From Macrostomum lignano (taxonomy: Eukaryota), in assembly GCA_002269645.1 (NCBI GenBank), contig NIVC01001111.1, positions 1 through 64,000 on the forward strand: a stretch of 64,000 nt of DNA, read 5' to 3'. Below the pieces are notes generated by a model. The model was not told the origin of the DNA. It worked only from the letters and a program-made list of their open reading frames with translations, and did no database searches. The position numbers and the translations under genes were made by a program. Shown here piece after piece: positions 8,216-58,959 of this stretch. Numbering within the stretch: position 1 is the stretch's first letter; each line of letters starts with the position of its first letter.

Positions 8216-10048
8216 CTAGCCGTCCTCCCATGGCGTCACCGTAGAGCTGTCCGGCTTTTTCTCTGACGCAGCCTCCGTCTCCCAAGGCGCCACCTCGCCC
8301 GCGCTCGCCTTGTTCGCGACTGGTTCGCAGCCGCTCGGCCCAGCTTGATCCACCGGTCGCGTCTTGAGCACTCGAGTTCCGGATGAACTCGATGCCTCCA
8401 GACTGCTCTGCGTCTCCACTTTGCCGCGCTGAGAGATTGACGCTGTCACAGTTGGGTGCGCCGCGCATGACGATGTCGGCTGTGCCGCCTTCTTGCCGAA
8501 GTTAAACAGGGCGCCGCGCTTTTTCATAGCGTGGCGCTCAATTGCCGACTGCAGCAGCGTTTTGTAATCGTCGGAGCGCAGGAAGCGCTGGTAGCTGTCC
8601 TTCTTCATCAACAGGTAGATGTGCTCCTGGGCTTCTTCAAAGGAGAATCGGTTGGGCGACTGCATGCCCTTCTGAGTAATTGTCATGGTCTTGGAATCGA
8701 TGTTGATCTCGGATGGCGCTCCCGGAGCAAGAAACTCGTCAAAAATTTGCGTCATGCGCGATCTCAGCTGGTCGTTGGGACCGAACTTGTAATCCTGCAC
8801 AGCTAGCCAAAAGCTGAGATTCTCCGAGCTGAACTCCTTAGTAAGAAACTGTTTAAAGTACTCCCGGCCAGCTGCATCACGGAGGAGAAAGTCAAAATAA
8901 GCTGACCACATTTTTACCTGCTTTGGTGTCAGACCACTCTCTCCGTAGCCCAGGCTGTTCTGAAACACAGCCACATCATCACCAACCCAGGGCGACTGAC
9001 CGCTGGTCAGAGCGGCGCTATCTGATGATGGTCCTCCTGAGTGATCGGCTTCAGTAAAGGACGTGTCGACCGCAGGCCCAGCACCAGCTGTGCCTGCGGC
9101 TGAATTGCTGCCATTTGCTGGTTGCTGTGCCATCGTCCCTGCTGTCCCTGGTGCCGCCGGCCGAGTGTGCAAGAACCAATCAAATGCCTTGGAGATCTCG
9201 TAGCAAGCAATGATGGTCTCACCGGACTTGTGATGCGCATTCTGACTGCTGACTAGGGACTCCTTGTGCTGACGTCGGCGACGCTGCTTGGCTAATCGAT
9301 TCTGCGTCTGGGTGAGGCTGAAGTGCCGCGGTACCGGGTGATCAACTGAGTTAATGTAGCCCGGAGGCGGTCGGTGCACGCGCCAGTAGGCCTGCTCCTG
9401 CATTTCTAACACCATTCGGTCATTCTTTTTGCGCTCCCGCAGCAGCTTCAGCTCCTCCTCGGCCTGCAGAGCGATAAACTGCCAGCGATCGGCCAGCAAC
9501 TTTTGCAGCTTGGACAGGGCCAACTTTTCAAAGTCCTCGAAGCCTGGTTTCTGCTTGCTGCGAATCATGCGCTTGACCAGGTGAATAGCATAGTCTAGAT
9601 TGTCAGGTCGACCGGAAATCGATAGCCAATAATACGGCGACTGAAAGCGGTACAGACACGATGGATCGTCCCTCACCGCCAAGGAATAATCATCGCTCAG
9701 AGGGTAGACGTAGCCGTAGATTGCCAAGAGGCTGGCAATGTGGTTGGCCTCTGTCGGTTCCTCGGCTCCCGTGTATCGTCGGACCCAGGCGATGAGGTCG
9801 CTACCGGCAACTGCCGCCGGCACAGAGGTCAGAAATGCCTTCTGGGCTCGAAAAGTGACACCTGTTTGAGGATGTTGCATTGCCTGTACCATCGCCTCTA
9901 GCTTCGTGACGACGTGTGTATGACGCCAGTTGTCCAGCGCCGAGCTTGAGCTGCAGCCAACTGTCTGCTGCTGCTGCTGCTGGTGGTCGGTGACCTGGCG
10001 TCCTTCTTCGTCTTCACTGACATCGGATGCACAGTTTACTAGTGTCAT
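8216..10048 (-). CDS. R7-family regulator of G-protein signalling (DEP-DHEX-degenerate GGL-RGS), single exon, 610 aa
   Basis: DEP (KLEAMVQAMQHPQTGV...GSDLIAW...YRFQSPYYW), DHEX (LDYAIHLVKRM...QEQAYWRVHRPPPG), GGL remnant (DWFL...SPWVGDD) and RGS box (FDFLLRDAAGREYFKQFLTKEFSSENLSFW...EINID...KKDSYQRFLRS). RGS6/7/9/11-type, but the exact orthologue cannot be resolved by eye. Confidence 0.93.
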   Translation of the reverse strand: MTLVNCASDVSEDEEGRQVTDHQQQQQQTVGCSSSSALDNWRHTHVVTKLEAMVQAMQHPQTGVTFRAQKAFLTSVPAAVAGSDLIAWVRRYTGAEEPTEANHIASLLAIYGYVYPLSDDYSLAVRDDPSCLYRFQSPYYWLSISGRPDNLDYAIHLVKRMIRSKQKPGFEDFEKLALSKLQKLLADRWQFIALQAEEELKLLRERKKNDRMVLEMQEQAYWRVHRPPPGYINSVDHPVPRHFSLTQTQNRLAKQRRRRQHKESLVSSQNAHHKSGETIIACYEISKAFDWFLHTRPAAPGTAGTMAQQPANGSNSAAGTAGAGPAVDTSFTEADHSGGPSSDSAALTSGQSPWVGDDVAVFQNSLGYGESGLTPKQVKMWSAYFDFLLRDAAGREYFKQFLTKEFSSENLSFWLAVQDYKFGPNDQLRSRMTQIFDEFLAPGAPSEINIDSKTMTITQKGMQSPNRFSFEEAQEHIYLLMKKDSYQRFLRSDDYKTLLQSAIERHAMKKRGALFNFGKKAAQPTSSCAAHPTVTASISQRGKVETQSSLEASSSSGTRVLKTRPVDQAGPSGCEPVANKASAGEVAPWETEAASEKKPDSSTVTPWEDG

Positions 10049-25839: not shown

Positions 25840-27147
25840 CGAGGGATACTCTAAAAGTTTTGCAATTCGACTATTTAAAGTTAATTTTGCCAAACTTTTC
25901 TATTACAATCCTTCAAAGTAGGCTCCCCGGAACTGCAAACACTTGTGCGCTCGTCCGAGCCACTTGTTCATCAAGCCCTGGAAGTCTTCAATTGGGATGC
26001 CGTCAATCGCCTCCTTCGCCGCCTGCTCCAGCTCCTCGTCGGACTGAAACCTGCGCCCCCTAAGCGACTTTTTGATTTCTGGAAAGAGCCAGAAGTCGCA
26101 GGGGGCGAGGTCTGGTGAGTAGGCCGGGTGTGGTAGCGTTGAAATGCCCTCTTGGTCCAGGAACGCTCGAGTTGCAGCAGCCGTGTGGGCGGGGGCGTTG
26201 TCATGGTGAAGCTTCCGCCCTCGCATTCCCGTCCTTGGCGCCCTCTGGGTCACGCTGTCGATCACGACTGGCAAGCACTCTTCAGTGTACCATCGAGCAG
26301 TGACTGTAGCTTGACCCTCCAGCTTCACCATCGCCACCACGCCTTGTGAGTCGAAGAAGATGGCAAACATCCGCTTGCCCTGGGACCGGGACCGCCTTGC
26401 TTTCAGGGGTCGTTGACCACCTTCCGGCACCCACTCTGCACTGCTGCGCTTTGTCTCGACGTCAAAATGATACAGAAACGTCTCATCACCAGTGATGACC
26501 TCAGAGCGGCGCTGATGGCTCCCGTGCTCATATCGATCGATGAGAAACTGACAGAACTCCATGCGGGCCTGTTTTTGAGCATCTGTCAGGATGTGGGGTA
26601 TCCATCGGGCACAAAGCTTCCTGACTCTCAGGTGATCGTGTAGAATCGTATCGACCGCTGCCGATCCAATGCCGACATTCATAGCTAGCATGTCCGTGGT
26701 GATTCGCGGATCCTGATGAATCAGCTCCTGCACTGCAGCGATGTTTTCCTCCGTCACTGCTGTCGGAGGTCTCCCGGGCCGGGGGTCGTCAGAAAAGCTG
26801 GTCCTGCCGGCCTGGAACTCGCGGTACCAGCGTGTAACCGTAGCATATGACGGCGCTTGAGCCTCCAATGTTGCTAGTAGCTCGGCATGAGTCTCAAGCG
26901 CCGTGAGCTTTCGCTTGTGGCAGTACCAAATTAGTAGCCGATTCTGCTCACGATTCAATTCCATGGCTGCAGCTGTACAGTTAAGGAGTCTCTGACTTTG
27001 ACTGGGGGCTGAGCAGGCGTATATGTATGAATTCACTTGAAAATTGAGGTGGTGACTATGTACATGTTTATTGTACAGAGAGTTGGTTTTGAAGATTGTG
27101 CGACTTGCGTAAGTGGTTGAATTGCAAAACTTTTGGAGTATCCCTCG
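25840..27147 (-). mobile_element. Full-length mariner DNA transposon (1308 bp)
   Basis: 28-bp TIRs CGAGGGATACTC(T/C)AAAAGTTTTGCAATT (1 mismatch) with TA target duplication (25838-25839, 27148-27149). Confidence 0.97.
25903..26964 (-). CDS. Mariner transposase, DD34D, 353 aa, uninterrupted
   Basis: ATG at 26964 (MELNREQNRLLIWY...). HTH region, WIPHIL (WVPHEL-like), ITGDET, HHDNAPAH and YSPDLAPCDFWLF motifs, with exactly 34 residues between the 2nd and 3rd Asp. Confidence 0.95.
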   Translation of the reverse strand: MELNREQNRLLIWYCHKRKLTALETHAELLATLEAQAPSYATVTRWYREFQAGRTSFSDDPRPGRPPTAVTEENIAAVQELIHQDPRITTDMLAMNVGIGSAAVDTILHDHLRVRKLCARWIPHILTDAQKQARMEFCQFLIDRYEHGSHQRRSEVITGDETFLYHFDVETKRSSAEWVPEGGQRPLKARRSRSQGKRMFAIFFDSQGVVAMVKLEGQATVTARWYTEECLPVVIDSVTQRAPRTGMRGRKLHHDNAPAHTAAATRAFLDQEGISTLPHPAYSPDLAPCDFWLFPEIKKSLRGRRFQSDEELEQAAKEAIDGIPIEDFQGLMNKWLGRAHKCLQFRGAYFEGL

Positions 27148-27330
27148 TATAGTTAAACTAGTTGACAATTGTATTCTTGTCAGTACAAGTCTCAAGAGTG
27201 GTATATTTTGATATTGTGCATATGACAGTAAAATGTGGTGCCTTGGGCTATCCTGCCATAATGAGCTAGGAAATCACCCAGTCACAACAATTAGAACTTG
27301 TTTGCAATCACACATTATTGCTGTCTACTA

Positions 27331-32765: not shown

Positions 32766-32920
32766 ATCCCCTGAAGCAAAGTTGAATAAATTCGCGAGTG
32801 TCCTTAAATATATTTTTTGGCTATTTGTTTGTTTTTAATTTTGCTTTTGCATCAAACTGTTTGTTAAAAACTCTTAGTAAGCAATAATACTATATAATCA
32901 TTTCAGCCAATTCGCTCAAC

Positions 32921-33775
32921 ATGGGCCAGGCGGCCACCAAACAGGAGGCATTCTGGGAGTGCTGCAGCTACGGTCGCGAATGGAAAGTTCGCCAATTATT
33001 AGAATCTGGCGGCATCGACGTCAACTGGGTGAGCCACGTGCACCAGTCCTGCCCCATCCACGTGGCCAGCCAGGGCAAGCCGGAGATTGTCCGCCTGCTG
33101 CTGTCAGCCGGCTGCCAGGTCGACGCTCGCGACAGCAAGCAGCACACTGCGCTGCACCATTCCGCTATGACTGGCCAAGATGAAATTGTTCAAATGCTAT
33201 TGAAAGCCGGCGCCGATCCCAGCGCTGTAGACGAGAGAGGCTGGTCGGCCCTCATCATGGCCTGCTATTTCTGCCAGCCGGCCGTTGTGCGCTGCCTGCT
33301 GGACGCCAGGTGCGACTTCCTGCACCGGAATAACGACGGCCGCAACTGCCTGCACGAGCTGTGCCGGGCGGCGCCAAAGAGTCAAATCTGTCAGAACGGC
33401 AAGCGGGTTAGCACGGCCTGTCTGGACCAGGCCAACTCGCCTGTGTACGCCGCTGTCATGGCCGAGCTGCAGGCTGCCGCCGCCGCCTCTGGTAACGGCG
33501 ATTCCGCTGGCAATGGCGACGGCGAGGACGCGTTGGCCGCCGTCGCTGCTGCCGCTGCCGCCGCCGCCGCGCGCAACCAGCAGCAGCAGAAGCAATCCGC
33601 TGTTGACGCAGAGGGCGACACTGCCACCCACAGTGTTTCTTCGGCACCGATCGCGCCGCCGACTTCTAATGGACCGGCGGCCCTGCCGTTGGACAGGTAA
33701 ATTGGAGAGGGGTTGAGTGTTTAGCTACTCTAGCTGTCTGTCTTGTTGTCTTCATCTGTCTGTCTGTCTGTCTTG

Positions 33776-33820
<45 letters not shown>

Positions 33821-33824
33821 AGAG

Positions 33825-33873
<49 letters not shown>

Positions 33874-33909
33874 GTCTGTCTCTCTGTCTGTCTGTCTGTC
33901 TCTCTGTCC

Positions 33910-33945
<36 letters not shown>

Positions 33946-33999
33946 TGTTGTCTGTCTGTCTGTCTGTCGTCTGTCTGTCTGTCTGTCTGTCTGTCTTAG

Positions 34000-34068
<69 letters not shown>

Positions 34069-34077
34069 GTCTGTCTC

Positions 34078-34148
<71 letters not shown>

Positions 34149-35137
34149 GAGTGTCTGTCTGCCAGTCCCAGTCGGCCAGCTAACGGCACCGCCACCTCCC
34201 CGCCAGGTCACGCTTCGATCGCACCCTAGTGGACATAGCCGAGTGCCTGCTCAGCCGCTGTCCCGGCCTAAGCGTCGATGATCGATCCCAGCCGCCGAGA
34301 TCGGGCGCTCGCGGCGAGGCCGACTTCACTCCGCTGATGTTCGCCATCTACCACGGCCACCTGCCGCTGGCCAAGTGCCTGCTGGACCACGGAGCCGATG
34401 TTGGCGCCGCTGACATGTCGGGCTGGACGGCGCTTCACTGGGCCGTGAATCGGGAAGCGAAGGCGGCTGTGGAACTGCTGATTAGCTACGGGGCCAATCC
34501 GGAGAGGAAGTCCATGGTGCGTGAGAATCTGCTTTTAGCTGCAATATTCCGCTTCTATTCGTTTTTCTGGTCCCAATCTTTGTAACGTGCTTTCCATTTG
34601 AGATGTTCGGCTTCTGATTGGAGTATTGGAGTTTTGTGATTTTATATTATGGATGCTCTTTTTTAATTGGGATGTTCTGATTTAACAGGTATTCTGCTTT
34701 TCATAGGAATTTTCTGCTTTTACCTGAGGTGTTCTGCTTTTACTTGAGGTGTTCTGCTGTTACCTAAGGTGTTCTGCTCTTAATGGGGGTGTTTGCTTGT
34801 AATTATGGGGTTATGCCTTTAATTGGGGTGATTTGAAAAGTTTATCCCAAGAGATTTATTTTGTTAAACAAGTAATTTCCTGTTTATTTTGTTTAACTGA
34901 CAATCCTCTTCCCCTTTCTGTCAGCGCGGCGAGACGCCACTGGACCTGGCCGGTGAAGACCCGGAGATGAGGCAGATGCTGGCCCCGGCCTATCCGGAGA
35001 TCGTCACCAACGGCTACGTTACCACGGACGACGAGGGCGACGGCGAGTCAGTTGACGGATTCGAAACTCGCCAAGGCCATCAGCATCAGCAGCTGGCTAA
35101 CGGCTTTACCCATGCTAATAATGGTCGGGACATTTGA
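32921..35137 (+). CDS. Ankyrin-repeat protein with N-myristoylation motif, about 432 aa. Exons 32921-33696, 34207-34516, 34925-35137
   Basis: MGQAATK start. Ankyrin repeats CPIHVASQGKPEIVRLLL, TALHHSAMTGQDEIVQMLL, SALIMAC, NCLHELC, TPLMFAIYHGHLPLAKCLL, TALHWAV and TPLDLA. Junctions are phase-compatible (2, 0); the acceptor at 34206 is the only nearby AG that keeps the frame. Confidence 0.88.
33735..34160. repeat. (GTCT)n microsatellite filling ankyrin gene intron 1
   Basis: Direct read. Confidence 0.97.
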
Positions 35138-35813
35138 CATTTCATCTACTCCAAGTAGCTTGTCCGCGCAAATCATTGCAGTCTTGGTTGCTTTCTTTAT
35201 ATGCAGGATAAATTTTAAAAAATAACGGTATACTTTCTTTGTTAATTTAGTGTGTCGTTTCGCTTGTTTTGCGTCGATAGCAACTAGCTGCTTAGATGAA
35301 CGTCTGTGAAGCGCAAAGATGGAATGTTGGATTTTTTAAGAAACTTGTCCATCTGGATGCTTTTAGTTAGTAAATTAACTGTTATTACAACAGATACTAC
35401 CAGCTCCCAAGCCTATATAGTCTATTGCTATCGGTGTAACATTCTCCTTGTAAAAAATCCCCTGTAAACCCGGCTTCTGTCTGTCAACAGGAGAGAAAAC
35501 GAATCGATTTGGAATTCTACGAGTATTGAACAGCTTTGTGCGTTGCAAAGTTTTAAATCTTGCTGAGCTTCAGTATATAATCTATATTTTTGCTGGCCTT
35601 TCCCTAGCAGTCTATCAGTTACAGTCAGTAAATAAAAAAGTCGATTTTATGCCGCTACACTGAGAATGCTTTAATGCTATTCGTCGGATTTTAATTGATG
35701 CTTTGTCTCTCGCCTTTGACTAGCAAAATTTTAAAGAGTTAAACTACAAATCATAGGAGTTCATATTTATATTAGTTCATATTAGCTAGTATAATGCATC
35801 TGTAATATATAAT

Positions 35814-36122
35814 GGGGCCGTAGCCCAGTAGTCTAGCGCGGCGCTCTGATGTGCCAGCGGCCCAGGCTCGATTCCAAGTGCAGTCGTTGCTCGTGCAATT
35901 AACGCCGCCCCTGAGGGCCGACCCCCAAAGCACAGTGAAGTGTACATGCCTAACGGTAAATAAAGTCAGGGCCGCTGTACACTCCTGTGTGAGTGTGTGC
36001 CTGTGCGTATGACTGCGTACGTATCCGCACGCTTGTGTGCCTGCTCAGGGGAGTCGGCGGAATGGGCAGTAATGCCTCTCACCGGTTGTGTGACAATGGG
36101 TGCACACAACCTGTAATAAAAA
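35814..36122 (+). mobile_element. tRNA-derived SINE (about 310 bp)
   Basis: Head GGGGCCGTAGCCCAGTAG (A box) and GGCTCGATTCC (B box), central domain shared with other copies in the window, A-rich tail. Near-TSD ATCTGTAATAT at 35798-35808 and 36123-36133. Confidence 0.8.
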
Positions 36123-36984
36123 ATCTGTAATATTGACAACAGAAATTTACTATTTATTAACGTATAAATAATTAGGCTTTTAGAAATAGTTTTTTTATTT
36201 TCAATATTATGTTAAAACAATACATAAAATAAATGCAGTGTTTACATTTTTAGCTTAATTTTCACACGACTGACTTTTAGTAGGGTGTATCGCGCATTCG
36301 TGTAGATTGAATTTATTTTAATTTTTGCTGCTAAATAAAATGTAGGATAGAAGGCACGCTTCCGGTCGTATTTTTTAGTGCGTGATTAAATAAATTTTCT
36401 ACATTTTTAACTCTGAAAGTTTGTTTTGCCAAGGCCAAGTTACAAAATGCGCCACTCTTTGTTTGCGTCCGTTAGAAATATTTTTAATTTATCAGCGTGG
36501 CGTTTCTGTCAGCGTCTTGCCTTTCTTTAAGTTAAATTAGTTGATTCCGCTTTCATTCTTATCCCTGTATTATTATGATTTGGATAGCTTTATTATTTGT
36601 TCAAGTTGTTATTGTATTTATAGTCTTTGTTTTAAATAGCTTGATGTCAACTTTTCTTTATCTCATGACAGCTTAATAAACTTTGCAGGCGAATTTATTA
36701 GGATAAATGTTTATATAGTTAGCTTATTTATTATAACAAAGTATTGTTTGCTATTTCAACTCCTCCGGTCCATAAATGGTCGATTGAAAGTGTGCTAGTG
36801 TTAATTTATCTGCACTCCTTTTACCCCTGTGTGCTTGGCAAATAGCTCGTACAAATGCGATTATCTCGCTGCGCCGTGGATGCGCCAGTCAATAAAACTT
36901 TTTACTATTTGTGTGGTTACTTGCCGATTGGCTTTGAATTTCTGTTGTTAATTGATGTTGATTATTTTATTGGAGGAAAGGATA

Positions 36985-37315
36985 TATGAGGAGAGATAGG
37001 GGGTGAGAAAGTCAGGCCATAGACATTTCACCGGAGGGAAGGATAGATGAGGAGAGATAGAGGGTGAGACAGTCCGGCCATAGACATTTCACCGGAGGGA
37101 AGGATAGATGAGGAGAGATAGAGGGTGAGACAGTCCGGCCATAGACATTTCACCGGAGGGAAGGATAGATGAGGAGAGATAGAGGGTGAGACAGTCCGGC
37201 CATAGACATTTCACCGGAGGGAAGGATAGATGAGGAGAGATAGGGGGTGAGACAGTCCGGCCATAGACATTTCACCGGAGGGAAGGATAAATGAAGAAGA
37301 TAAATTAAGACAGTC
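36985..37315. repeat. Minisatellite, 61-bp unit, about 5.5 copies, just upstream of ELP4
   Basis: Unit GAGGAGAGATAGAGGGTGAGACAGTCCGGCCATAGACATTTCACCGGAGGGAAGGATAGAT. Confidence 0.93.
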
Positions 37316-37358
37316 CAATTGCCTAGCTATAGTCTTGTGTTTCTTGCCATTTCTTCAG

Positions 37359-37922
37359 TCTGGCTTTCGTCGCGTTGCTCCAGGCGGCCCCGGCGTCGGC
37401 ATCTCGCGGCCTCGGCCTCGCGTGCCCGGCGGCCGGCCCGTCTGTGGACAGCAGCAACAGCAGCAGAAGCAACAGCAGTTGGTGGCGCAGAATCAGCAGG
37501 CGACGGTCACCAGCTGCGGAGTGGCCGCTCTCGACGTATTGATTGGCGGCGGGCTGGCTGTCGGCGGGTTGTGCGTTGTCGGTGAGGATGGAAACACTGG
37601 CATCCCTTTTTAATTAGCTGGCAGCGACTATGAAATCCCTATTGTAACATCACTCTGATAATATCATATGCCAATTGTTTCTACGACACCCATAAAAAAC
37701 CCAACAACAGACGAAGACGCAACAGGCGCCTATGCAGGCGTGTTGACTCGCTATTTCCTGGCCCAGAGCCTGCTGGATGGGCATCACGTGATGCTAGTGG
37801 CCGCCAACCAAGCGCACTCGGAGTACCTGCTAGCGGTGGGTGGCAGGGTTGTGAGATGTCCTATGGGAGTAATTGCGGGGTTCTCTTTGATACTACTACT
37901 ACGACGACTACTACTACTACCG

Positions 37923-38014
<92 letters not shown>

Positions 38015-38024
38015 CTACTACTAT

Positions 38025-38116
<92 letters not shown>

Positions 38117-40692
38117 TTACTACCTCTACTAAACAACGCACTTAATTCCAGAATCTGCCAGATCTTGAGGAGGGTACAAAATCACAACAACAACAGCAAC
38201 AGCAACCAGCAGGTGGCATTGGAGACAGCGGCGCTGGCAACGACGACGGCCTGGCCATCGCCTGGCGTTACATGAACGCGCCGCAGTTCGAGGCGAGTGA
38301 CTATAAATAATAATATTTTTTACTACTTTATACTGATTAATCGTATCATTTTCGCCTCAATGATTTTCTCGTAGTAAATTGACTCAGTGCAACGGGCATG
38401 TCTGCTGCTTTTTGCGAACAAACTGACTCACCCCTCTCCATTATAGGAGCGGCACAGCCTTGACAAATCCACAACCGGAGCTAAAAGTTTCGATCTGTCA
38501 AAGAAGTTAGACTTGACAAAGCTCGAAGAGGCTGGCTCGCTTCGATTGAACGTTCTTCATCTTGACGAATTCGGGTGCGTTCCAATTGACAGATCCTGGC
38601 GTTCGTTGAAAAATGCTAAACTAAATAGGTTTTTCTGTAGGAAATTGCCTAGCCCTTAGTGAGTGATGTAGTGAGTCCCTGGATCCGCGATTACCCAATA
38701 TGGCCTTTCGCAGCAGTATCACGCAATTCAAAAATACCCGTTCCATACCGCTTAATGATAAGAGCATCGTAAGTAGTATAATGAGTTTAAACTGAAATTA
38801 GATAGATAGATAGATAGATAGATAAGTAGGTAGTTAGGTAGGTAGGTAGGTGGGTAGGTAATCTTACTCTTGGCCTTGAATTTCTGGTCATACACACCGA
38901 GATAATACTTCTATACTGATGCTCCAACCCGCAGCTCATTCCCTGCCAATGCCAGCCTGGCTTTGGATCAAATTCGGCAGCGCCTTGTCGATGGCGGGCC
39001 GGAATTCCGGTATCCCGACCGGCCCACTGAGGATACGCAGAGTCTGCTCAAAGTTGGTAAGACTTGCTGGCTAGTTTAATTCCTTCATATTTGTTATCTT
39101 TTTCTTGGTACTGACTTCTTTTTTTGACACTTGCCATGGACCGAGATTTCGAATCCTGCTCTACTGGGTGAGATGAGTGAGATTTCCGGTTTATCTGCTC
39201 TACTGGGTGAGATGAGTGAGATTTCCGGTTTATCTGCTCTACTGGGTGAGATGAGTGAGATTTCCGGTTTATCTGCTCTACTGGGTGAGATGAGTGAGAT
39301 TTCCGGTTTATCTGCTCTACTGGGTGAGATGAGTGAGATTTCCGGTTTATCTGCTCTACTGGGTGAGATGAGTGAGATTTCCGGTTTATCTGCTCTACTG
39401 GGTGCGATGGATGAGATTTCCAGTCTATCTGATCTACTGGGTGAGATTTCCGGTTTATCTGCTCTAATGGGTGAGATTTCCGGTCCATCTGATCTACTGG
39501 GTGAGATTTCCCGTCTATCTGATCTAATGGGTGAGATTTCCGGTCCATCTGATCTACTGGGTGAGATTTCCCGTCTATCTGATCTACTGGGTGAGATTTC
39601 TGGTCTATCTGATCTACTGGGTGAGATTTCCGGTTTATCTGCTCTAATGGGTGAGATTTCCGGTCCATCTGATCTACTGGGTGAGATTTCCCGTCTATCT
39701 GATCTACTGGGTGAGATTTCTGGTCTATCTGATCTACTGGGTGAGATTTCCAGTCTATCTGATCTACTGGGTGAGATTTCCAGTCTATCTGATCTACTGG
39801 GTGAGATTTCCAGTCTATCTGATCTACTGGGTGAGATTTCCAGTCTATCTGATCTACTGGGTGAGATTTCCGGTCTATCTAATCTACTGGGTTAGATTTC
39901 CTGTAACTATAAAAACCTCTTCGCTCCCCGCCTCGCCTGCAGTTATCCCAGGTTTCGCATCCCCACTCTGGGGCCGCTTAGACAACGAGAGCGACGCCCT
40001 GCGCTGTTTGTACAGCCTGCGGGATCTCTGCGCCAAGCACCTGTGCACCGTCTGGCTCACCGTGCCTGACTGTCTGCGACTGCAGGTGAGTTCATGTGGA
40101 ATTGGCTGAGAAGTGAGAACTGGTGGATAGGCCCTGCGCTTACGCATTCGTACTACTGAACTGCAAGTAGAGAACTGTTTAAGCGAGCCAATGAGTGGCC
40201 TATCTACTTATAGTAGTATCTGTGGTGGTGGACTTGGAACAATTGCCAACGATTTTCAGCGGCCGATCCTGTCCGATCGAATGCGGCACCTGGTCGACTA
40301 CTGTCTGCGGCTGGACTCTCTGCAGGTGGCCGGCGGTCGACGCCGTGCCGCCAATCCTTTGTACCGCGACCTGCACGGCCTGCTGAGCCTGGCCAAGCTG
40401 CCCTGCCTGCCCGGCTCCGCGGCCCCGGTGGCCCGGCCGGACACGCTCGAGTTTGGCTTCAGAGTGCGCCGGAAGAATTTCCTTATTCAGGTTGGCGTGT
40501 TTTGCGTTTTGTGGTGACTGATGGCCGCTATATGTGCCCTGTAGGCTTAGGTGCAGGTAGTTGGGCTCAGACAGACAGACAGACAGACAGGCAGGCACAC
40601 AGACAGACAGACAGACGGAGACAGACAGACGGACAGACAGACAGACAGACAGAGACAGACAGACGGACAGAGAGACAGACACACAGAGACAG

Positions 40693-40723
<31 letters not shown>

Positions 40724-40834
40724 AACACACAGAGACAGACAGACGGACAGACAGACAGACAGACAGACGGACAGACAGACAAACACACAGAGACAGACAG
40801 ACAGACAGACAGACGGACAGACAGACAAACACAC

Positions 40835-40893
<59 letters not shown>

Positions 40894-40898
40894 GGCAC

Positions 40899-40988
<90 letters not shown>

Positions 40989-41046
40989 GGAGACAGACAG
41001 ACGGACAGAGAGACAGACGGACAGAGAGACAGACACACAGAGACAG

Positions 41047-41085
<39 letters not shown>

Positions 41086-41192
41086 CACAGAGACAGACAG
41101 ACGGACAGACAGACGGACAGACAGACAGACAGACAGACGGACAGACAGACAGACAAACACACAGAGACAGACGGACAGACAGACAAACACAC

Positions 41193-41237
<45 letters not shown>

Positions 41238-41410
41238 GACAGACAGACGGACAGACAGACAGACAGACAGCTGTATTTCCGCTCTCCTACAACCAATTGC
41301 AGCGGCTGCACCTGCCACCCGACATCTCGGAGACGGCCAGTCGAGTGAGCAAATCAGTGCCGCAGCCAACCTGCGGCACCTCTGCGCAGGGTACTCCATT
41401 GGACTTTTGA
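37359..41410 (+). CDS. ELP4: Elongator complex protein 4. Exons 37359-37581, 37711-37835, 38152-38292, 38447-38574, 38935-39056, 39943-40085, 40260-40490, 41303-41410 (406 codons; start Met not genomic-contiguous)
   Basis: Motifs TSCGVAALDVLIGGGLAVGG, YFLAQSL, LAIAWRY, SFDLSK, GFASPLWG, NPLYRDLHGLL, RLHLPPD and C-terminal LDF*. All junctions are phase-compatible, including one GC-AG intron (38293-38446). Confidence 0.92.
37891..38125. repeat. (TAC)n microsatellite in ELP4 intron 2
   Basis: Direct read. Confidence 0.97.
38797..38858. repeat. (GATA)n/(GGTA)n compound microsatellite
   Basis: Direct read. Confidence 0.85.
39162..39900. repeat. Two-tier minisatellite in ELP4 intron 5: 39-bp units (about 6) followed by derived 30-bp units (about 16)
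   Basis: CTACTGGGTGAGAT[GAGTGAGAT]TTCCRGTYTATCTGMT. Confidence 0.95.
40567..41270. repeat. (GACA)n microsatellite with higher-order variants in ELP4 intron 7
   Basis: Direct read. Confidence 0.97.
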
Positions 41411-48900: not shown

Positions 48901-51900
48901 TAGAAAACTGACCAATCTAGAAAACTGACCGATCTAGAAAACTGACCAATCTAGAAAACTGACCGATCGCTTTTGGAACATCTCTCAGGCAGCTGCACCA
49001 GGTTCGCACGCCGGAGCCGCCGCTCGTAGAGCCGAACATGACCACCATGATCCGCCTGCCCGAAGCGGACCCGCTAGTCGGCGTCCCTGGCGAGCCGGCC
49101 ATGTCCGAGGACTGCCTGTTTCTGAGTATTGGCCGGCCGCGCGACTACAACAGCGGCTACCCGGTGATTGTGTTCGTCACCGGCTCCGGTTTCGTGTCCG
49201 AGACTACGCGCAGCCTCGGCCAGGACTCGCTGCTGCACTCGGACGACGGCCTGCCAGACCAGCTTCAGGCCGTTGTTGTCCGTATCGGCTACCGGCTGGC
49301 CTTCCATGGCACCTTCCGGCCACCTGGTGACGCCACCGGCTTCAGGGTGGTCAACTACGGCCTGTCGGACCTGGTTCGCGGTCTCGAGCATCTGCGAAAG
49401 ACTGTCGAGCACTTTGGCGGGGATAAAAACAAGTGAGCTGCTGAGATATCGACTTTGTCGATCTTGTAAGACTTTCCAGACATGGCGATGGGGTGTAGAA
49501 ACGGATTGGCGATGGGGTGTAGGAACGGATTGGCGATGGGGTGTAGGAACAGATTGGTGATGGGGTGTAGAAACGGATTGGCGATGGGGTGTAGGAACGG
49601 ATTGGTGATGGAGTGTAGAAACGGATTGGTGATGGGGTGTAGGAACGGATTGGTGATGGAGTGTAGGAACGGATTGGTGATGGGGTGCAGAAACGGATTG
49701 GTGATGGGGTGCAGAAACGGATTGGTGATGGGGTGTAGAAACGGAGTGGCGATTGGGTGTAGAAACGGATTGGTGATGGGGTGTAGAAACGGATTGGCGA
49801 TGGGGTGTAGGAACAGATTGGTGATGGGGTGTAGAAACGGATTGGCGATGGGGTGTAGGAACGGATTGGTGATGGAGTGTAGAAACGGATTGGTGATGGG
49901 GTGTAGAAACGGAGTGGCGATTGGGTGTAGAAACGGATTGGTGATGGGGTGTAGAAACGGATTGGCGATAGTGTAGAATACGAACTGGCAATAGTAGAAA
50001 GAAACCCATTGAAGACAAAAAAGAAAAAAGGTAGTTGTCAATTCCCCCCCCCCCAGAGTCACAGTGTTCGGTCACGGCAGCGGCGCGGCGATGGTAATGG
50101 CGCTGCTGCAACTGCAGCAGCGGACAGGCAGGCGACTCGTCCACGGGGCCTGGCTGTCCAGCGGTCCGTCCCGCATCCCGGACTCGGCGCCCGAGATGTT
50201 GAAAGCATTGAAAAAGATCCACGCCAACAGGTGGACCAACATTACAGAGGCGCAGCTCAACTGTAAGGTGGACAATGTCACCGAGTGCCGACGCGAGTTG
50301 GAGACGATGGACGAGGTGAGATCTTTGTCGAGAGTGTGGAGGAATGCAGGCAGGGGGGCAGACCAGCTCAGCGTTAAACGCGTCTGAATCTCACGCCACG
50401 GCCCGTGGTTCGATTCCGTGCGTGGCCCGCATTCGTTTGGTGCTTGAGCACGAAAATTGGCCGGCGGGTTGTCGTGCGATTCACACTCGTGAGGGCCAAC
50501 CACAAGGCACAGAGAGTGTACATGTCTGACGATTAGACAGTCAGGGCCGCTGTACACCCTGTGTGAGCGTCTGTATGAGTTGCGTGCCTGCGTACAGTAT
50601 TGGCGCGCTTGCATGTGCTCAGGAGTCAGCGCAATGGGCAGAACTGCCTCAGAGCTGGTTGTGGGACGGATGTCACTGAAGGCGGACTGAAGTTTAGGAA
50701 CTGTATGTATCTCGACGCATGCAGGGGCGTCGCCATGGATTTTACGGTGGGGGGACAAAGCCAAGAGTTCAACATGTACATGTAAATGACTAAATTTTGG
50801 CACTCGATTATTTTGCGCCGTAGACACTCATTTTGGCGCTACAGGCACTCATTTTAGCGCTGCAGGCACTCATTTTAGCGCCGCAGGCACTCATTTTAGC
50901 GCCGCAGGCACTCATTTTAGCGCCGCAGGCACTCATTTTGGCGCTACAGGCACTCATTTTAGAGCCACAGGCACTCATTTTAGCGCCGCAGGCACTCATT
51001 TTAGCGCCGCAGGCACTCATTTTAGCGCCGCAGGCACTCATTTTGGCGCTACAGGCACTCATTTTAGCGCCGCAGGCACTCATTTTAGCGCCGCAGGCAC
51101 TCATTTTAGCGCCGCAGGCACTCATTTTAGCGCCGCAGGCACTCATTTTAGCGCCGCAGGCACTCATTTTAGCGCCGCAGGCACTCATTTTAGCGCCGCA
51201 GGCACTCATTTAAGCGCCGCAGGCACTCATTTTAGCGGCGCAGGCACTCATTTTAGCGCTGCAGGCACTCATTTTAGCGCCGCAGGCACTCATTTTAGCG
51301 CCGCAGGCACTCATTTTAGCGCCGCAGGCACTCATTTTAGCGCCGCAGGCACTCATTTTAGCGCCGCAGGCACTCATTTTAGCGCTGCAGGCACTCATTT
51401 TGGCGCTACAGGCACTCATTTTAGCGCCGCAGGCACTCATTTTAGCGCCGCAGGCACTCATTTTAGCGCCGCAGGCACTCATTTTAGCGCCGCAGGCACT
51501 CATTTTAGAGCCACAGGCACTCATTTTAGCGCCGCAGGCACTCATTTTAGCGCCGCAGGCACTCATTTTAGCGCTGCAGGCACTCATTTTAGCGCCACAG
51601 GCACTCATTTTAGCGCCGCAGGCACTCATTTTAGCGCCGTAGGCACTCATTTTAGCGCTGCAGGCACTCATTTTAGCGCTGCAGGCACTCATTTTAGCGC
51701 CACAGGCACTCATTTTAGCGCCGCAGGCACTCATTTTAGCGCCGTAGGAAACTCATTTTGGCGCTACAGGCACTCATTTTAGAGCCACAGGCACTCATTT
51801 TAGCGCCACAGGCACTCATTTTAGCGCCGCAGGCACTCATTTTAGCGCCGCAGGCACTCATTTTAGAGCCACAGGCACTCATTTTAGCGCCGCAGGCACT

Positions 51901-57138: not shown

Positions 57139-57992
57139 CTACTGGGCAGACACGGTGACACCGTAGACGCGGATTACATTGTCCGAGTAGCCAGCGAAAA
57201 GGGTCTGACCGTCGGCACTCCAGGCAAGCGACAGGCACTCTGGACTAGCTGGTTTGCGCTTCAGATTAGTGCTAGTGGCCACAACCTCGGTGCGCAGATC
57301 GTCAACAACAACTTTGTTCTCCAGATCCCAGATCTTAATTAGAGGACCGGTAGCCGCGCACAGCCAGTAGCGATTAGGCGAGAAGGTCAGCGTGTTGATG
57401 CTCTCGCCACCGTCCAGGGTGTACAGATGCTTGCCCTCGTTCAGGTCCCATAGCATGGCTTTGCCGTCCTTGCCACCGGAGGCGCACAGGCTGCCGTCGG
57501 GGCTGACAGCAACAGTGTTGAGGTAGCCGCTGTGCCCAATGTGATTGGTGCGCAACTTGCAGTTGGTCAGGTTCCACACCTTAACTAGACGGTCAACACC
57601 GGCGCTGACAATAATTGGATTGGCCGTGTTCGGCGAGAACCTCACACAGCTAACCCAGTCAGAGTGATTGTCCTCAGTGATGGTGTACTTGCACACTCCC
57701 AGCGTATTCCACAGTTTGATAGTGCGATCGCGCGAGCCGGACACGATCTGGCGATTATCGGCGCTAAACGCCACGGACAGGACGTCCTTAGTGTGGCCAG
57801 TGAATCGACGAGTTGTGAGGCCGGTTGTGAGATCCCACAGACGCAGGGTGCTGTCCCAGGAGCCGGACAGAGCAAACTGGCCATCAGATGACATCACGAC
57901 ATCCGACACGAAGTGATTGTGGCCGCGTAAAGCGCGCTTAGGCACGCCGTAGTTCTCGCCGCGGTTCAGCTCCCACATGATGAGACTTTTGT
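57139..57992 (-). CDS. RACK1: RACK1 (receptor for activated C kinase 1), large exon 2. Exon 1 (about 36 codons) not found in the window
   Basis: [50 protein letters not shown]...[18 protein letters not shown], a highly conserved WD40 sequence. The acceptor TTTTAG at 57993 is phase 1, the position of the conserved first intron. Confidence 0.97.
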
Positions 57993-58959
57993 CTAAAATT
58001 GTCAACCAGATCGCATGGTTAATTAGAATCCCCAATAAGGATAGTTATATGCTCTTAAGTTTTGAAAAGGCTTTAAAAGGAATGGAGGACTGAGAAGTTT
58101 GAGTTTGAAAAGTTAAGAATATTAGAATATTATTCTTGAAATAAGTTTGAAAAATTAAATAAAGGACATGTAGCATATTTTTAAGGGTGCTTAAGAAGTT
58201 GCAAACACATTGTGCTTAGTTTTGAGGCTTTGGAAGAAGTGGAGCATTAAAAATTGAGTTAATGGAGCATATATTGATAGGGGCATGATTTCCATAAACT
58301 TGGAAAGGTAGGGTAGTATTTGGTCTAGGCATATTTCATTATTTTTTTAATATTCCCAATAGTACACATACATGCGCAACTTCTGAAATTACGCTGGCCG
58401 TGCGACTTAGTTTTCGATAAAAAATGCGACTTACCTATGAAAGAGCCAAGCAAAAACTTTAGGTAAACGGCAGGAGTAACTATAACCATATTTTTAAAGC
58501 TAAATGCCTCGCCAGCTAATTAGTGCTGCGTGCAGATTTCGCGTTTTTATAACAGCTAATCAGTATGTCATCTAGTGGCGGCATGAAGCAATTAGTAAAT
58601 TGTCAGTACAGTGTAGTGAGCATACTACAAAAGTCATGATTCATGAATGTCCAGAAGTAAGTGAAGTGAATACAGTGTGACCTATAGCTCAAGAACGATT
58701 TGCTAGACGATTTGGCATGGAAGATGAGAGCCCTGATTCAGATGGCTCATCAGATGCAGAATACGAATCCAGTAGAGATACAAGCTGTGAAAACCCACAG
58801 ATTTTTAAACCACTGAATTCTAATTCCCGGAACTATTTTTGCATAGATTCTAAATTTGAAGTCATGCTCAAACAAAAACTTGTTAACAGTTAGGAAAAAG
58901 GCAAAGATGGGAGTAATGCATGTTAAACTAAGATTTGAGGCCTTTGCAAATTCTCTCCA

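What the first reader, a model, noticed from the sequence alone, without database searches (positions are those of the whole stretch)
37340..37400. ELP4 lacks a genomic start codon; its Met may come from the spliced leader
The first coding exon begins in phase 0 right after a strong acceptor (TTTCTTCAG|TCT GGC TTT CGT CGC). The upstream frame hits TGA at 37248 with no ATG and runs into a 61-bp minisatellite. Adding a single Met gives M-S-G-F-R-R, matching the short M-x-S-F-R/Q-K/R start I recall for invertebrate ELP4s. Flatworm spliced leaders are known to end in AUG that can serve as the initiator. If the host is a flatworm, translation of this tRNA-modification subunit would depend on trans-splicing.
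Basis: partly seen in the sequence, partly recalled or inferred. Interest (0 to 1): 0.75.

Follow-up and report, generated by a model that had tools for sequence, protein, structure and literature searches.

The report
Flatworm ELP4 gene without own start codon
The ELP4 gene of the flatworm Macrostomum lignano has no start codon of its own, and most likely borrows the AUG at the end of the trans-spliced leader, a mechanism known in flatworms since 2006 but not confirmed here with RNA data.

Summary
The window is Macrostomum lignano scaffold NIVC01001111.1:1-64000. ELP4 (Pfam PAXNEB, E 1.2e-58) has 8 exons, 37359-41410. Exon 1 starts right after ccatttcttcag|TCT. Upstream in frame there is a TGA at 37248 and no ATG, and a 61-bp minisatellite lies at 36972-37302.

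All three genomic copies share this layout. NCBI annotates the protein as 5'-partial. UniProt models start at an ATG inside intron 1, which drops the conserved N-terminus.

- The host is a flatworm whose single 35-nt spliced leader (SL) ends in ATG.
- The acceptor matches the published trans-splice motif [T/C]TNCAG and is in phase 0.
- SL-Met plus SGFRR gives MSGFRR, the commonest N-terminal form among the ELP4 proteins fetched (MSSF.., MSGFVKRRR).
- None of 30 possible upstream one-exon ATG starts has a consensus donor.

No SL-ELP4 junction read or cDNA could be reached with these tools, and the public transcript model stops 42 nt short of the acceptor. Trans-splicing at 37359 is therefore inferred (about 0.7).

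SL-AUG initiation was shown in Schistosoma in 2006 and is noted for Macrostomum. This is a new member of a known kind, and useful mainly for fixing annotation.

The parts
32921..35137 (+). Upstream same-strand gene, an ankyrin-repeat protein. A possible operon partner, or simply the neighbour that limits the room for an unannotated ELP4 5' exon.
   Evidence: Called gene L001 5533-7737 = window 32933-35137, with Ank Pfam families. The ORF's ATG is at 32921. The same neighbour is present in all three copies.
35813..36094 (+). Dispersed repeat in the intergenic region or outron, with a tRNA-like 5' part.
   Evidence: blastn: 35886-36094 matches 50468-50667 (76%) and 2030-2116 in reverse (85%). 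ARAGORN calls no tRNA.
36972..37302 (.). 61-bp minisatellite, 5.4 copies, directly upstream of the acceptor. It is non-coding, and its copy number differs between the genomic copies.
   Evidence: TRF. The alignment of the three copies is broken by gaps across this array. The ATG in each unit is followed by an in-frame TGA, and the unit's GTGAGA donor would be in phase 2, which does not fit exon 1 (own reading; absent from the list).
37248..37250 (+). In-frame TGA that closes the ELP4 frame upstream. There is no in-frame ATG between it and 37359.
   Evidence: Sequence. ORF list: the longest ORF in this frame starts at TTG 37335.
37339..37358 (+). Polypyrimidine tract and 3' splice acceptor cttcag, the predicted SL trans-splice acceptor.
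   Evidence: 80% pyrimidine and a match to [T/C]TNCAG. The motif is from PMC8629364. Identical in the three copies.
37359..37581 (+). ELP4 coding exon 1 (SGFRRVAPGG...GLCVV), entered in phase 0. It has no ATG.
   Evidence: Exact spliced model. NCBI's 5'-partial CDS starts inside it at 37401.
37711..37835 (+). ELP4 exon 2.
38152..38292 (+). ELP4 exon 3, followed by a GC-AG intron (GAG|gcgagt).
38447..38574 (+). ELP4 exon 4.
38935..39056 (+). ELP4 exon 5.
39943..40085 (+). ELP4 exon 6.
40260..40490 (+). ELP4 exon 7.
41303..41410 (+). ELP4 exon 8, ending ...GTPLDF and the stop TGA at 41408-41410.
37668..37710 (+). ATG inside intron 1 that the UniProt models (A0A1I8GZJ4, A0A1I8H5S2) use as the start. 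This is an ab initio artefact caused by the missing genomic start codon.
   Evidence: P0003 and P0004 begin MPIVSTTPI(I)KNPTTDEDATG; ORF 37668... These models lack the 75 N-terminal residues, including the conserved ALDxxIGGGL block seen in the orthologs fetched.

Best explanation
ELP4 pre-mRNA of Macrostomum lignano is SL trans-spliced at the acceptor cttcag|T (37358/37359). The 35-nt leader ends in AUG, so the mature mRNA reads ...UUAUUGCAUG|UCU GGC UUU CGU CGC. The leader's AUG is the initiator codon of a 407-residue ELP4, MSGFRRVAPGG...GTPLDF. The genome encodes codons 2-407 only, so full-length ELP4 can be made only from the trans-spliced mRNA. What is shown: the gene model, the absence of a genomic start codon, the quality and phase of the acceptor, the identity of the organism, and the fit of the predicted N-terminus to orthologs. 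What comes from the literature: the SL sequence, the acceptor motif, and the fact that flatworm SL AUGs can initiate translation. What is inferred: that this acceptor is used for trans-splicing, and that translation starts at the SL AUG.
For: (1) Organism and gene: the window equals NIVC01001111.1:1-64000 of M. lignano assembly GCA_002269645.1, and the gene is BOX15_Mlig018002g1. It belongs to PAXNEB/ELP4, and phmmer finds 893 relatives.
(2) No in-frame ATG lies between TGA 37248 and the exon. The first in-frame ATG inside the coding sequence is in exon 2 (HHVMLVAAN), which would remove the conserved N-terminal third.
(3) The SL ends in ATG, and 30-39% of M. lignano genes are trans-spliced. 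[quoted passage not shown]
(4) The acceptor matches [T/C]TNCAG, has the strongest pyrimidine tract locally, and is in phase 0.
(5) MSGF places the conserved Phe at residue 4, the modal position in the fetched ELP4 proteins (26 cases). P0044 starts MSGFVKRRR.
(6) Thirty ATG-to-GT phase-0 single-exon candidates exist in the 2.2 kb back to the upstream gene, and none has the GT[G/A]AG donor found at 65% of M. lignano introns.
(7) Transcript-based NCBI models of all three copies are 5'-partial with no upstream exon. RNA-seq was mapped end-to-end, so reads carrying the SL drop out unless trimmed, whereas cis junction reads would have mapped. The neighbouring ankyrin gene is truncated in the same way: its CDS is called from 32933, although an in-frame ATG lies at 32921, 14 nt after a tttcag acceptor.
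(8) Precedent: in S. mansoni the SL AUG is in frame in 28% of trans-spliced mRNAs, and more than 40 cDNAs need it (Cheng et al. 2006, via PMC9851317). The final ATG of the Macrostomum SL is described as a translation start codon (PMC10468722).
Against: No RNA evidence for an SL junction at 37359 was obtained. The annotation pipeline cuts transcripts at SL-read peaks (PMC5730564), yet the public model starts at about 37399-37401, not 37359, so no peak seems to have been recorded there. Low expression could explain that, but it is not support. About 35% of M. lignano donors lack GTRAG, so weak candidates (GTAAAA 35449, GTAATG 36068, GTGACA 36089, GTAATA 36112, ATG|GTCGAT 36778) and multi-exon 5' structures are not excluded. 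Parasitic flatworms share acceptors between cis- and trans-splicing (PMC12582326). The three copies are 97-100% identical, so they give no phylogenetic test. No ortholog from another Macrostomum species or another identified flatworm could be examined.
Confidence: 0.7

Rival explanations
1. The 37359 acceptor is an ordinary cis acceptor. A short, unannotated upstream exon supplies ATG, perhaps with a few codons, and the public models merely miss it.
For: About 35% of M. lignano donors lack the GTRAG consensus. The public transcript is truncated at its 5' end, so its true 5' end is unknown. Some ELP4 orthologs carry 5-40 residues before the S-F-x-K/R motif.
Against: None of the candidates has a consensus donor. 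Spliced reads across a cis junction would map and extend the model, yet none of the three transcript-based copies and neither ab initio model has such an exon. A same-strand gene ends 2.2 kb upstream, which limits the room. The minisatellite directly upstream varies in copy number between copies.
Confidence: 0.17
2. Translation starts elsewhere without trans-splicing. Either it starts at a near-cognate codon (for example TTG 37335 or 37344) on an unspliced 5' leader, or at a downstream or intronic ATG (37668, or Met in exon 2), giving an N-terminally altered or truncated ELP4.
For: The frame is open from 37251. The 3' part of intron 1 is in frame with exon 2, and the UniProt models use ATG 37668.
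Against: The truncated forms lose the S-F-R-R motif and the ALDxxIGGGL block that are conserved across the orthologs inspected. A strong acceptor placed exactly one codon before the conserved motif would then be a coincidence. Non-AUG initiation as the only route is rare (general knowledge).
Confidence: 0.08
3. The locus is defective: a pseudogene copy or a mis-assembly that has lost its first exon.
For: The genome is highly duplicated and repeat-rich, and a minisatellite abuts the exon.
Against: Three independent scaffolds carry the same arrangement. All 8 exons are intact, with canonical splice sites and an uninterrupted 406-codon frame that scores strongly against PAXNEB. No other ELP4 cluster from this species turned up in the two searches that returned hits.
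Confidence: 0.03

Closest known systems
Flatworm mRNAs that use the spliced leader's 3'-terminal AUG as initiator Met (Cheng, Cohen, Ndegwa and Davis, J Biol Chem 2006; Schistosoma mansoni)
   Same: The SL ends in AUG. The acceptor sits in phase 0 at the first codon after Met. There is no genomic start codon, and the conserved N-terminus begins right at the junction. Reported frequencies: the SL AUG is in frame in 28% of trans-spliced mRNAs, and more than 40 cDNAs need it.
   Different: The species is different (free-living Macrostomorpha rather than a trematode), and so is the gene. The SL junction and translation from the SL AUG are inferred here, whereas those authors showed them with cDNAs and reporter assays.
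slORFs: ORFs created by SL addition (slORFfinder, PMC9851317)
   Same: The start codon is supplied in trans by the leader.
   Different: Those slORFs are mostly new or alternative ORFs in nematodes, Oikopleura and trypanosomes, and often use non-AUG codons within the SL. Here the SL would complete the main ORF of a conserved housekeeping gene with a true AUG.
ELP4/PAXNEB, the Elongator subunit of the Elp456 RecA-like hexamer
   Same: Full-length Pfam PAXNEB match; the N-terminal S-F-x-K/R motif; the LDxxLGGGL block; the C-terminal LHLPPD...LDF.
   Different: Two poly-Q runs, and a Gly/Pro/Arg-rich linker after the motif. The start codon is not encoded at the locus.

Membership tests
ELP4 / PAXNEB (PF05625) | Significant full-length match to the family profile | tested here: met
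   E 1.2e-58, 199 bits against a cutoff of 28; residues 50-407 on profile positions 17-366 of 366. phmmer finds 893 relatives, the best at 1e-41 to 1e-30.
ELP4 / PAXNEB (PF05625) | Conserved terminal motifs: N-terminal S-F-x-K/R close to Met, and C-terminal LHLPP(D/E)...(L/I)DF | tested here: met
   SGFRR at codons 2-6 of the predicted protein, and RLHLPPDISETASR...PLDF at the C-terminus.
SL-AUG-initiated flatworm mRNA (Cheng et al. 2006 class) | The organism has an SL RNA whose leader exon ends in AUG | tested here: met
   The organism is identified as M. lignano. The published SL ends ...TTATTGCATG and is followed by a GTAAG donor in a 109-nt SL RNA gene (PMC8629364). There is no SL RNA gene in this window, as expected.
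SL-AUG-initiated flatworm mRNA (Cheng et al. 2006 class) | No usable genomic start codon: the reading frame is closed upstream with no in-frame ATG, and homology starts at the acceptor | tested here: met
   TGA at 37248 and no ATG up to 37359. The ortholog motif starts at codon 2.
SL-AUG-initiated flatworm mRNA (Cheng et al. 2006 class) | A 3' splice acceptor in phase 0 with the ORF that resembles trans-splice acceptors | tested here: met
   cTTCAG fits [T/C]TNCAG, with 80% pyrimidine upstream and phase 0. The motif is not specific: there are 2.4 matches per kb on this strand.
SL-AUG-initiated flatworm mRNA (Cheng et al. 2006 class) | The SL-mRNA junction is observed in cDNA or RNA-seq at that acceptor | not testable with these tools
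   No raw reads were accessible. The two protein searches that returned hits listed no M. lignano ELP4 other than the genome-derived cluster, and 29 weaker hits were not listed. Exact look-ups of M- and SL-extended proteins were negative. The gene id appears in no held paper or supplement. The public model starts at about 37401, which is not a splice site.
SL-AUG-initiated flatworm mRNA (Cheng et al. 2006 class) | Translation actually initiates at the SL AUG | not testable with these tools
   This needs N-terminal proteomics, ribosome profiling or a reporter assay.
Downstream gene of an SL-resolved operon | A same-strand upstream gene within about 1 kb after subtracting repeats (criterion of PMC8629364) | tested here: inconclusive
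   The ankyrin gene's stop at 35137 lies 2221 nt from the acceptor at 37359. About 610 nt of that is repeat (331-nt minisatellite plus a roughly 280-nt dispersed repeat). The upstream 3' UTR length is unknown, so the adjusted distance is around 1-1.6 kb, close to the threshold.

The most novel reading that the evidence does not exclude
ELP4 is one visible case of a genome-wide class. A sizeable share of the '5'-partial' or N-terminally mis-modelled genes of Macrostomum may have lost their own start codons and depend obligatorily on the SL AUG. Start-codon loss would then act as a ratchet that makes trans-splicing irreversible for core housekeeping genes such as Elongator, and the arrangement would be conserved in M. 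cliftonense and M. hystrix.
Probability: 0.3. Interest if true: 0.5.

Novelty: new member of a known kind. Interest (0 to 1): 0.3.

Why it matters
If confirmed, full-length ELP4, and so an intact Elongator Elp456 ring for tRNA wobble-uridine modification, can be made in this model flatworm only from trans-spliced mRNA.

The practical value is for annotation. NCBI lists the protein as partial, and UniProt carries models that start inside an intron and lack the conserved N-terminus. Pipelines that trim the leader, ATG included, or that demand a genomic ATG will mis-model every gene of this type. Adding back the SL's ATG at mapped trans-splice sites would correct them.

It also gives a clean candidate for testing SL-AUG initiation in a flatworm where transgenesis is available. 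The mechanism itself has been known for twenty years, so a specialist would not be surprised.

Tried and rejected
- **Rfam and SL search.** Rfam on the whole window gave no hit, and the SL sequence with up to 3 mismatches gave no match. The SL RNA gene is elsewhere in the genome, as expected.
- **First protein search.** Poly-Q words saturated the candidate list, so it returned only the gene itself.
- **Second protein search.** A 117-residue N-terminal query returned nothing, not even the self hit. I treat this as a limit of the word index, not as evidence.
- **Third protein search.** With the poly-Q runs removed it found 149 relatives, but no other Macrostomum or named flatworm ELP4 and no RNA-derived M. 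lignano sequence. Only the best 120 hits were listed, so short N-terminal fragments could be hidden among the other 29.
- **Exact look-ups.** Six hypothetical full-length products (with M, without M, and with the SL-encoded VSYCEDSIYCM extension, for two alleles) are all absent from the collection.
- **Logan transcript contigs.** I fetched contigs for three close relatives, hoping for flatworm orthologs with an SL at the 5' end. P0168 starts MQTSFNKKQRG, nearly as the Styela clava protein P0163 does (MQTSFNKKPRG), and P0005 starts MQTSFKKEQR, so both are probably ascidian. P0029 is of unknown origin and shows no leader-AUG junction. None of the three is informative.
- **Literature.** The gene id Mlig018002 occurs in no held paper or supplement. 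Wasik et al. 2015 is not held.
- **Comparing the three genomic copies.** I looked for a conserved island upstream. The copies are 97-100% identical apart from repeat-length differences, so there is no resolving power.
- **The minisatellite as source of an ATG exon.** Rejected: the ATG in each unit runs into TGA after 6 codons, and the unit's GTGAGA donor would be in phase 2.
- **Prokaryote-style promoter and terminator scan.** Not meaningful for this eukaryote.

Full report
**What is there**

The sequence at 37340-37400 reads gtgtttcttgccatttcttcag|TCT GGC TTT CGT CGC GTT.... I built a spliced model by demanding exact translation to a known protein. The result is eight exons: 37359-37581, 37711-37835, 38152-38292, 38447-38574, 38935-39056, 39943-40085, 40260-40490 and 41303-41410. 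Together they encode SGFRRVAPGGPGVG followed, residue for residue, by NCBI protein PAA61214.1, and they end with TGA at 41408-41410. With a Met added, the product matches Pfam PAXNEB (ELP4) at E 1.2e-58 over profile positions 17-366. phmmer finds 893 relatives.

Walking the ELP4 frame upstream from 37359 meets TGA at 37248-37250 with no ATG in between. A 61-bp minisatellite of 5.4 copies occupies 36972-37302.

**Whose gene it is**

The only close hit is 'hypothetical protein BOX15_Mlig018002g1, partial [Macrostomum lignano]'. Locus L001, which is NIVC01001111.1:27401-51410 of assembly GCA_002269645.1, is identical to window 27401-51410.

Two further scaffolds carry copies of the gene. All three have identical sequence for the 120 nt before the exon and for the exon start. 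An ankyrin-repeat gene lies upstream on the same strand in all three.

**How existing annotation copes**

The transcript-based NCBI models are 5'-partial and start at 37401, inside exon 1 and not at a splice site. The UniProt models (A0A1I8GZJ4, A0A1I8H5S2) start at an ATG inside intron 1 (37668, MPIVSTTPIKNPTT...). They skip exon 1, and so they lose the conserved N-terminal 75 residues. Both behaviours are what one expects when a gene lacks a genomic start codon.

**Does the organism offer an AUG in trans?**

Yes. M. lignano has a single 35-nt spliced leader, CGGTCTCTTACTGCGAAGACTCAATTTATTGCATG. Its SL RNA gene has a GTAAG donor right after the ATG (PMC8629364).

Between 30% and 39% of the species' genes are trans-spliced. 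[quoted passage not shown] The enriched motif at trans-splice acceptors is [T/C]TNCAG.

The acceptor here, cTTCAG, fits that motif. Its 20 upstream bases are 80% pyrimidine, and it is in phase 0. The only other phase-0 AGs after the TGA (exon starts at 37281 and 37314) lie in purine-rich context. The motif alone is weak evidence, since it occurs 2.4 times per kb on this strand.

**Does the predicted N-terminus make sense?**

Joining the leader gives ...UUGCAUG|UCUGGCUUUCGU, which translates to MSGFRR. I located the conserved S-F-x-K/R motif in the ELP4 proteins fetched. The commonest position of its Phe is residue 4, in 26 proteins (MSSFRK, MSSFKK and similar). One protein starts MSGFVKRRR. 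Vertebrates carry 15-40 extra residues before the motif, but the short form is the usual one elsewhere.

**Could a cis exon supply the ATG?**

I listed every ATG in 35138-37358 that runs without a stop to a GT in phase 0. There are 30 such candidates. None has the GT[G/A]AG donor that marks 65% of M. lignano introns. The best of the rest are GTAAAA, GTAATG, GTGACA and GTAATA.

The minisatellite's own ATG runs into TGA after six codons, and its GTGAGA donor would be in phase 2, which does not fit exon 1.

In the annotation pipeline, RNA-seq reads were mapped end-to-end and SL-bearing reads were handled separately (PMC5730564). Reads crossing a cis junction would have mapped and extended the model, whereas reads carrying the leader would drop out. 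The model ends 42 nt inside the exon, which fits the second case better. The neighbouring ankyrin gene shows the same kind of truncation: its CDS is called from 32933 although an in-frame ATG lies at 32921, 14 nt after a tttcag acceptor. This is indirect support only.

**What is missing**

I found no SL-ELP4 junction. The two protein searches that returned hits showed no RNA-derived M. lignano ELP4, though 29 weaker hits were not listed. Exact look-ups of six hypothetical full-length products failed. The gene id appears in no held paper or supplement.

The pipeline cuts models at SL-read peaks, so a model starting at about 37401 implies that no peak was recorded at 37359. That may reflect low expression, but it counts mildly against the idea. 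The three copies are 97-100% identical apart from repeat lengths, so they cannot reveal a conserved upstream exon. No ortholog from another Macrostomum species was reachable.

**Operon question**

The ankyrin gene's stop codon (35137) lies 2221 nt before the acceptor. About 610 nt of that is repeat: the 331-nt minisatellite and a roughly 280-nt dispersed element with copies at 50468-50667 and 2030-2116. The length of the upstream 3' UTR is unknown. The repeat-adjusted distance is thus near the 1-kb criterion used for M. lignano operons. Operon membership is undecided, and it is not required for trans-splicing.

**Comparison with what is known**

The mechanism is the one described by Cheng, Cohen, Ndegwa and Davis (J Biol Chem 2006) for Schistosoma mansoni. 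There the leader's 3'-terminal AUG is in frame in 28% of trans-spliced mRNAs, and more than 40 cDNAs need it for a correct start (as summarised in PMC9851317). All reported parasitic-flatworm leaders end in ATG (PMC12582326). [quoted passage not shown]

At the sequence level, this locus meets every criterion of that class that could be tested. The two functional criteria, an observed junction and translation from the SL AUG, could not be tested here.

**Verdict**

The main rival is an unannotated cis exon (about 0.17).

This is a new member of a known kind, of modest interest (0.3). Its main use is as a clear example of why leader-trimming pipelines and ATG-requiring gene finders mis-model such genes, and as a convenient test case in a flatworm where transgenesis works. 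The decisive check is a simple search of public reads for the junction string, which these tools could not run.

Noticed in passing
window 38293-38446: Intron 3 of ELP4 is a GC-AG intron (TTCGAG|gcgagtga ... attatag|GAGCGG). The exact protein match requires this donor. The UniProt ab initio models mis-splice here (..MNAPHLDKS.. instead of ..MNAPQFEERHSLDKS..).
   Followed up: partly
window 37891-38131, 38799-38860, 39156-39901, 40568-41270: Four of the seven ELP4 introns consist largely of tandem repeats: (TAC)~80 in intron 2, (TAGG)~15 in intron 4, 39-bp and 30-bp minisatellites in intron 5, and (CAGA)~180 in intron 7. Their lengths differ between the three genomic copies.
   Followed up: partly
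window 35813-36094 (copies at 50468-50667 and 2030-2116, reverse): A dispersed repeat lies between the ankyrin gene and ELP4. Its 5' part looks tRNA-derived (GGGGCCGTAGCCCAGTAG...GGCTCGATTCC), so it may be a SINE. ARAGORN calls no intact tRNA.
   Followed up: partly
window 32900-32935: The upstream ankyrin gene has a trans-splice-like acceptor (catttcag|CCAATT, exon start 32907) 14 nt before its own ATG at 32921. If it is trans-spliced there, the leader's AUG would be out of frame and would open a short overlapping upstream ORF. The annotated CDS starts at 32933, so it is truncated at the 5' end as well.
   Followed up: partly
window 37668-37710; UniProt A0A1I8GZJ4 and A0A1I8H5S2: Public ELP4 models for this species start at an ATG inside intron 1 and lack the conserved N-terminal 75 residues. 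This is an annotation artefact worth correcting.
   Followed up: yes
window 36972-37302 compared with L002 and L003: The copy number of the 61-bp minisatellite just upstream of the acceptor differs among the three scaffolds, while the 120 nt next to the acceptor are nearly invariant (identical in L001 and L002 apart from one base; four substitutions in L003).
   Followed up: partly
window 25903-27195 (-): A 430-residue ORF with HTH_48, HTH_32, DDE_3 and Transposase_1 domains, i.e. a mariner/Tc1-like transposase.
   Followed up: no
window 8216-10048 (-) and 57139-58035 (-): Other genes in the window: a 610-residue uninterrupted ORF with DEP, DHEX and RGS domains (RGS7-like), and a WD40-repeat exon.
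   Followed up: no
L004 1-41 (Logan SRR3402057 transcript of an ELP4 relative): The closest non-Macrostomum ELP4 transcripts are probably ascidian: P0168 starts MQTSFNKKQRG, nearly as the Styela clava protein P0163 does. The 5' end of L004 contains ...TTGATTAATAAG, which may be part of an ascidian spliced leader. This is a recollection and was not tested.
   Followed up: no
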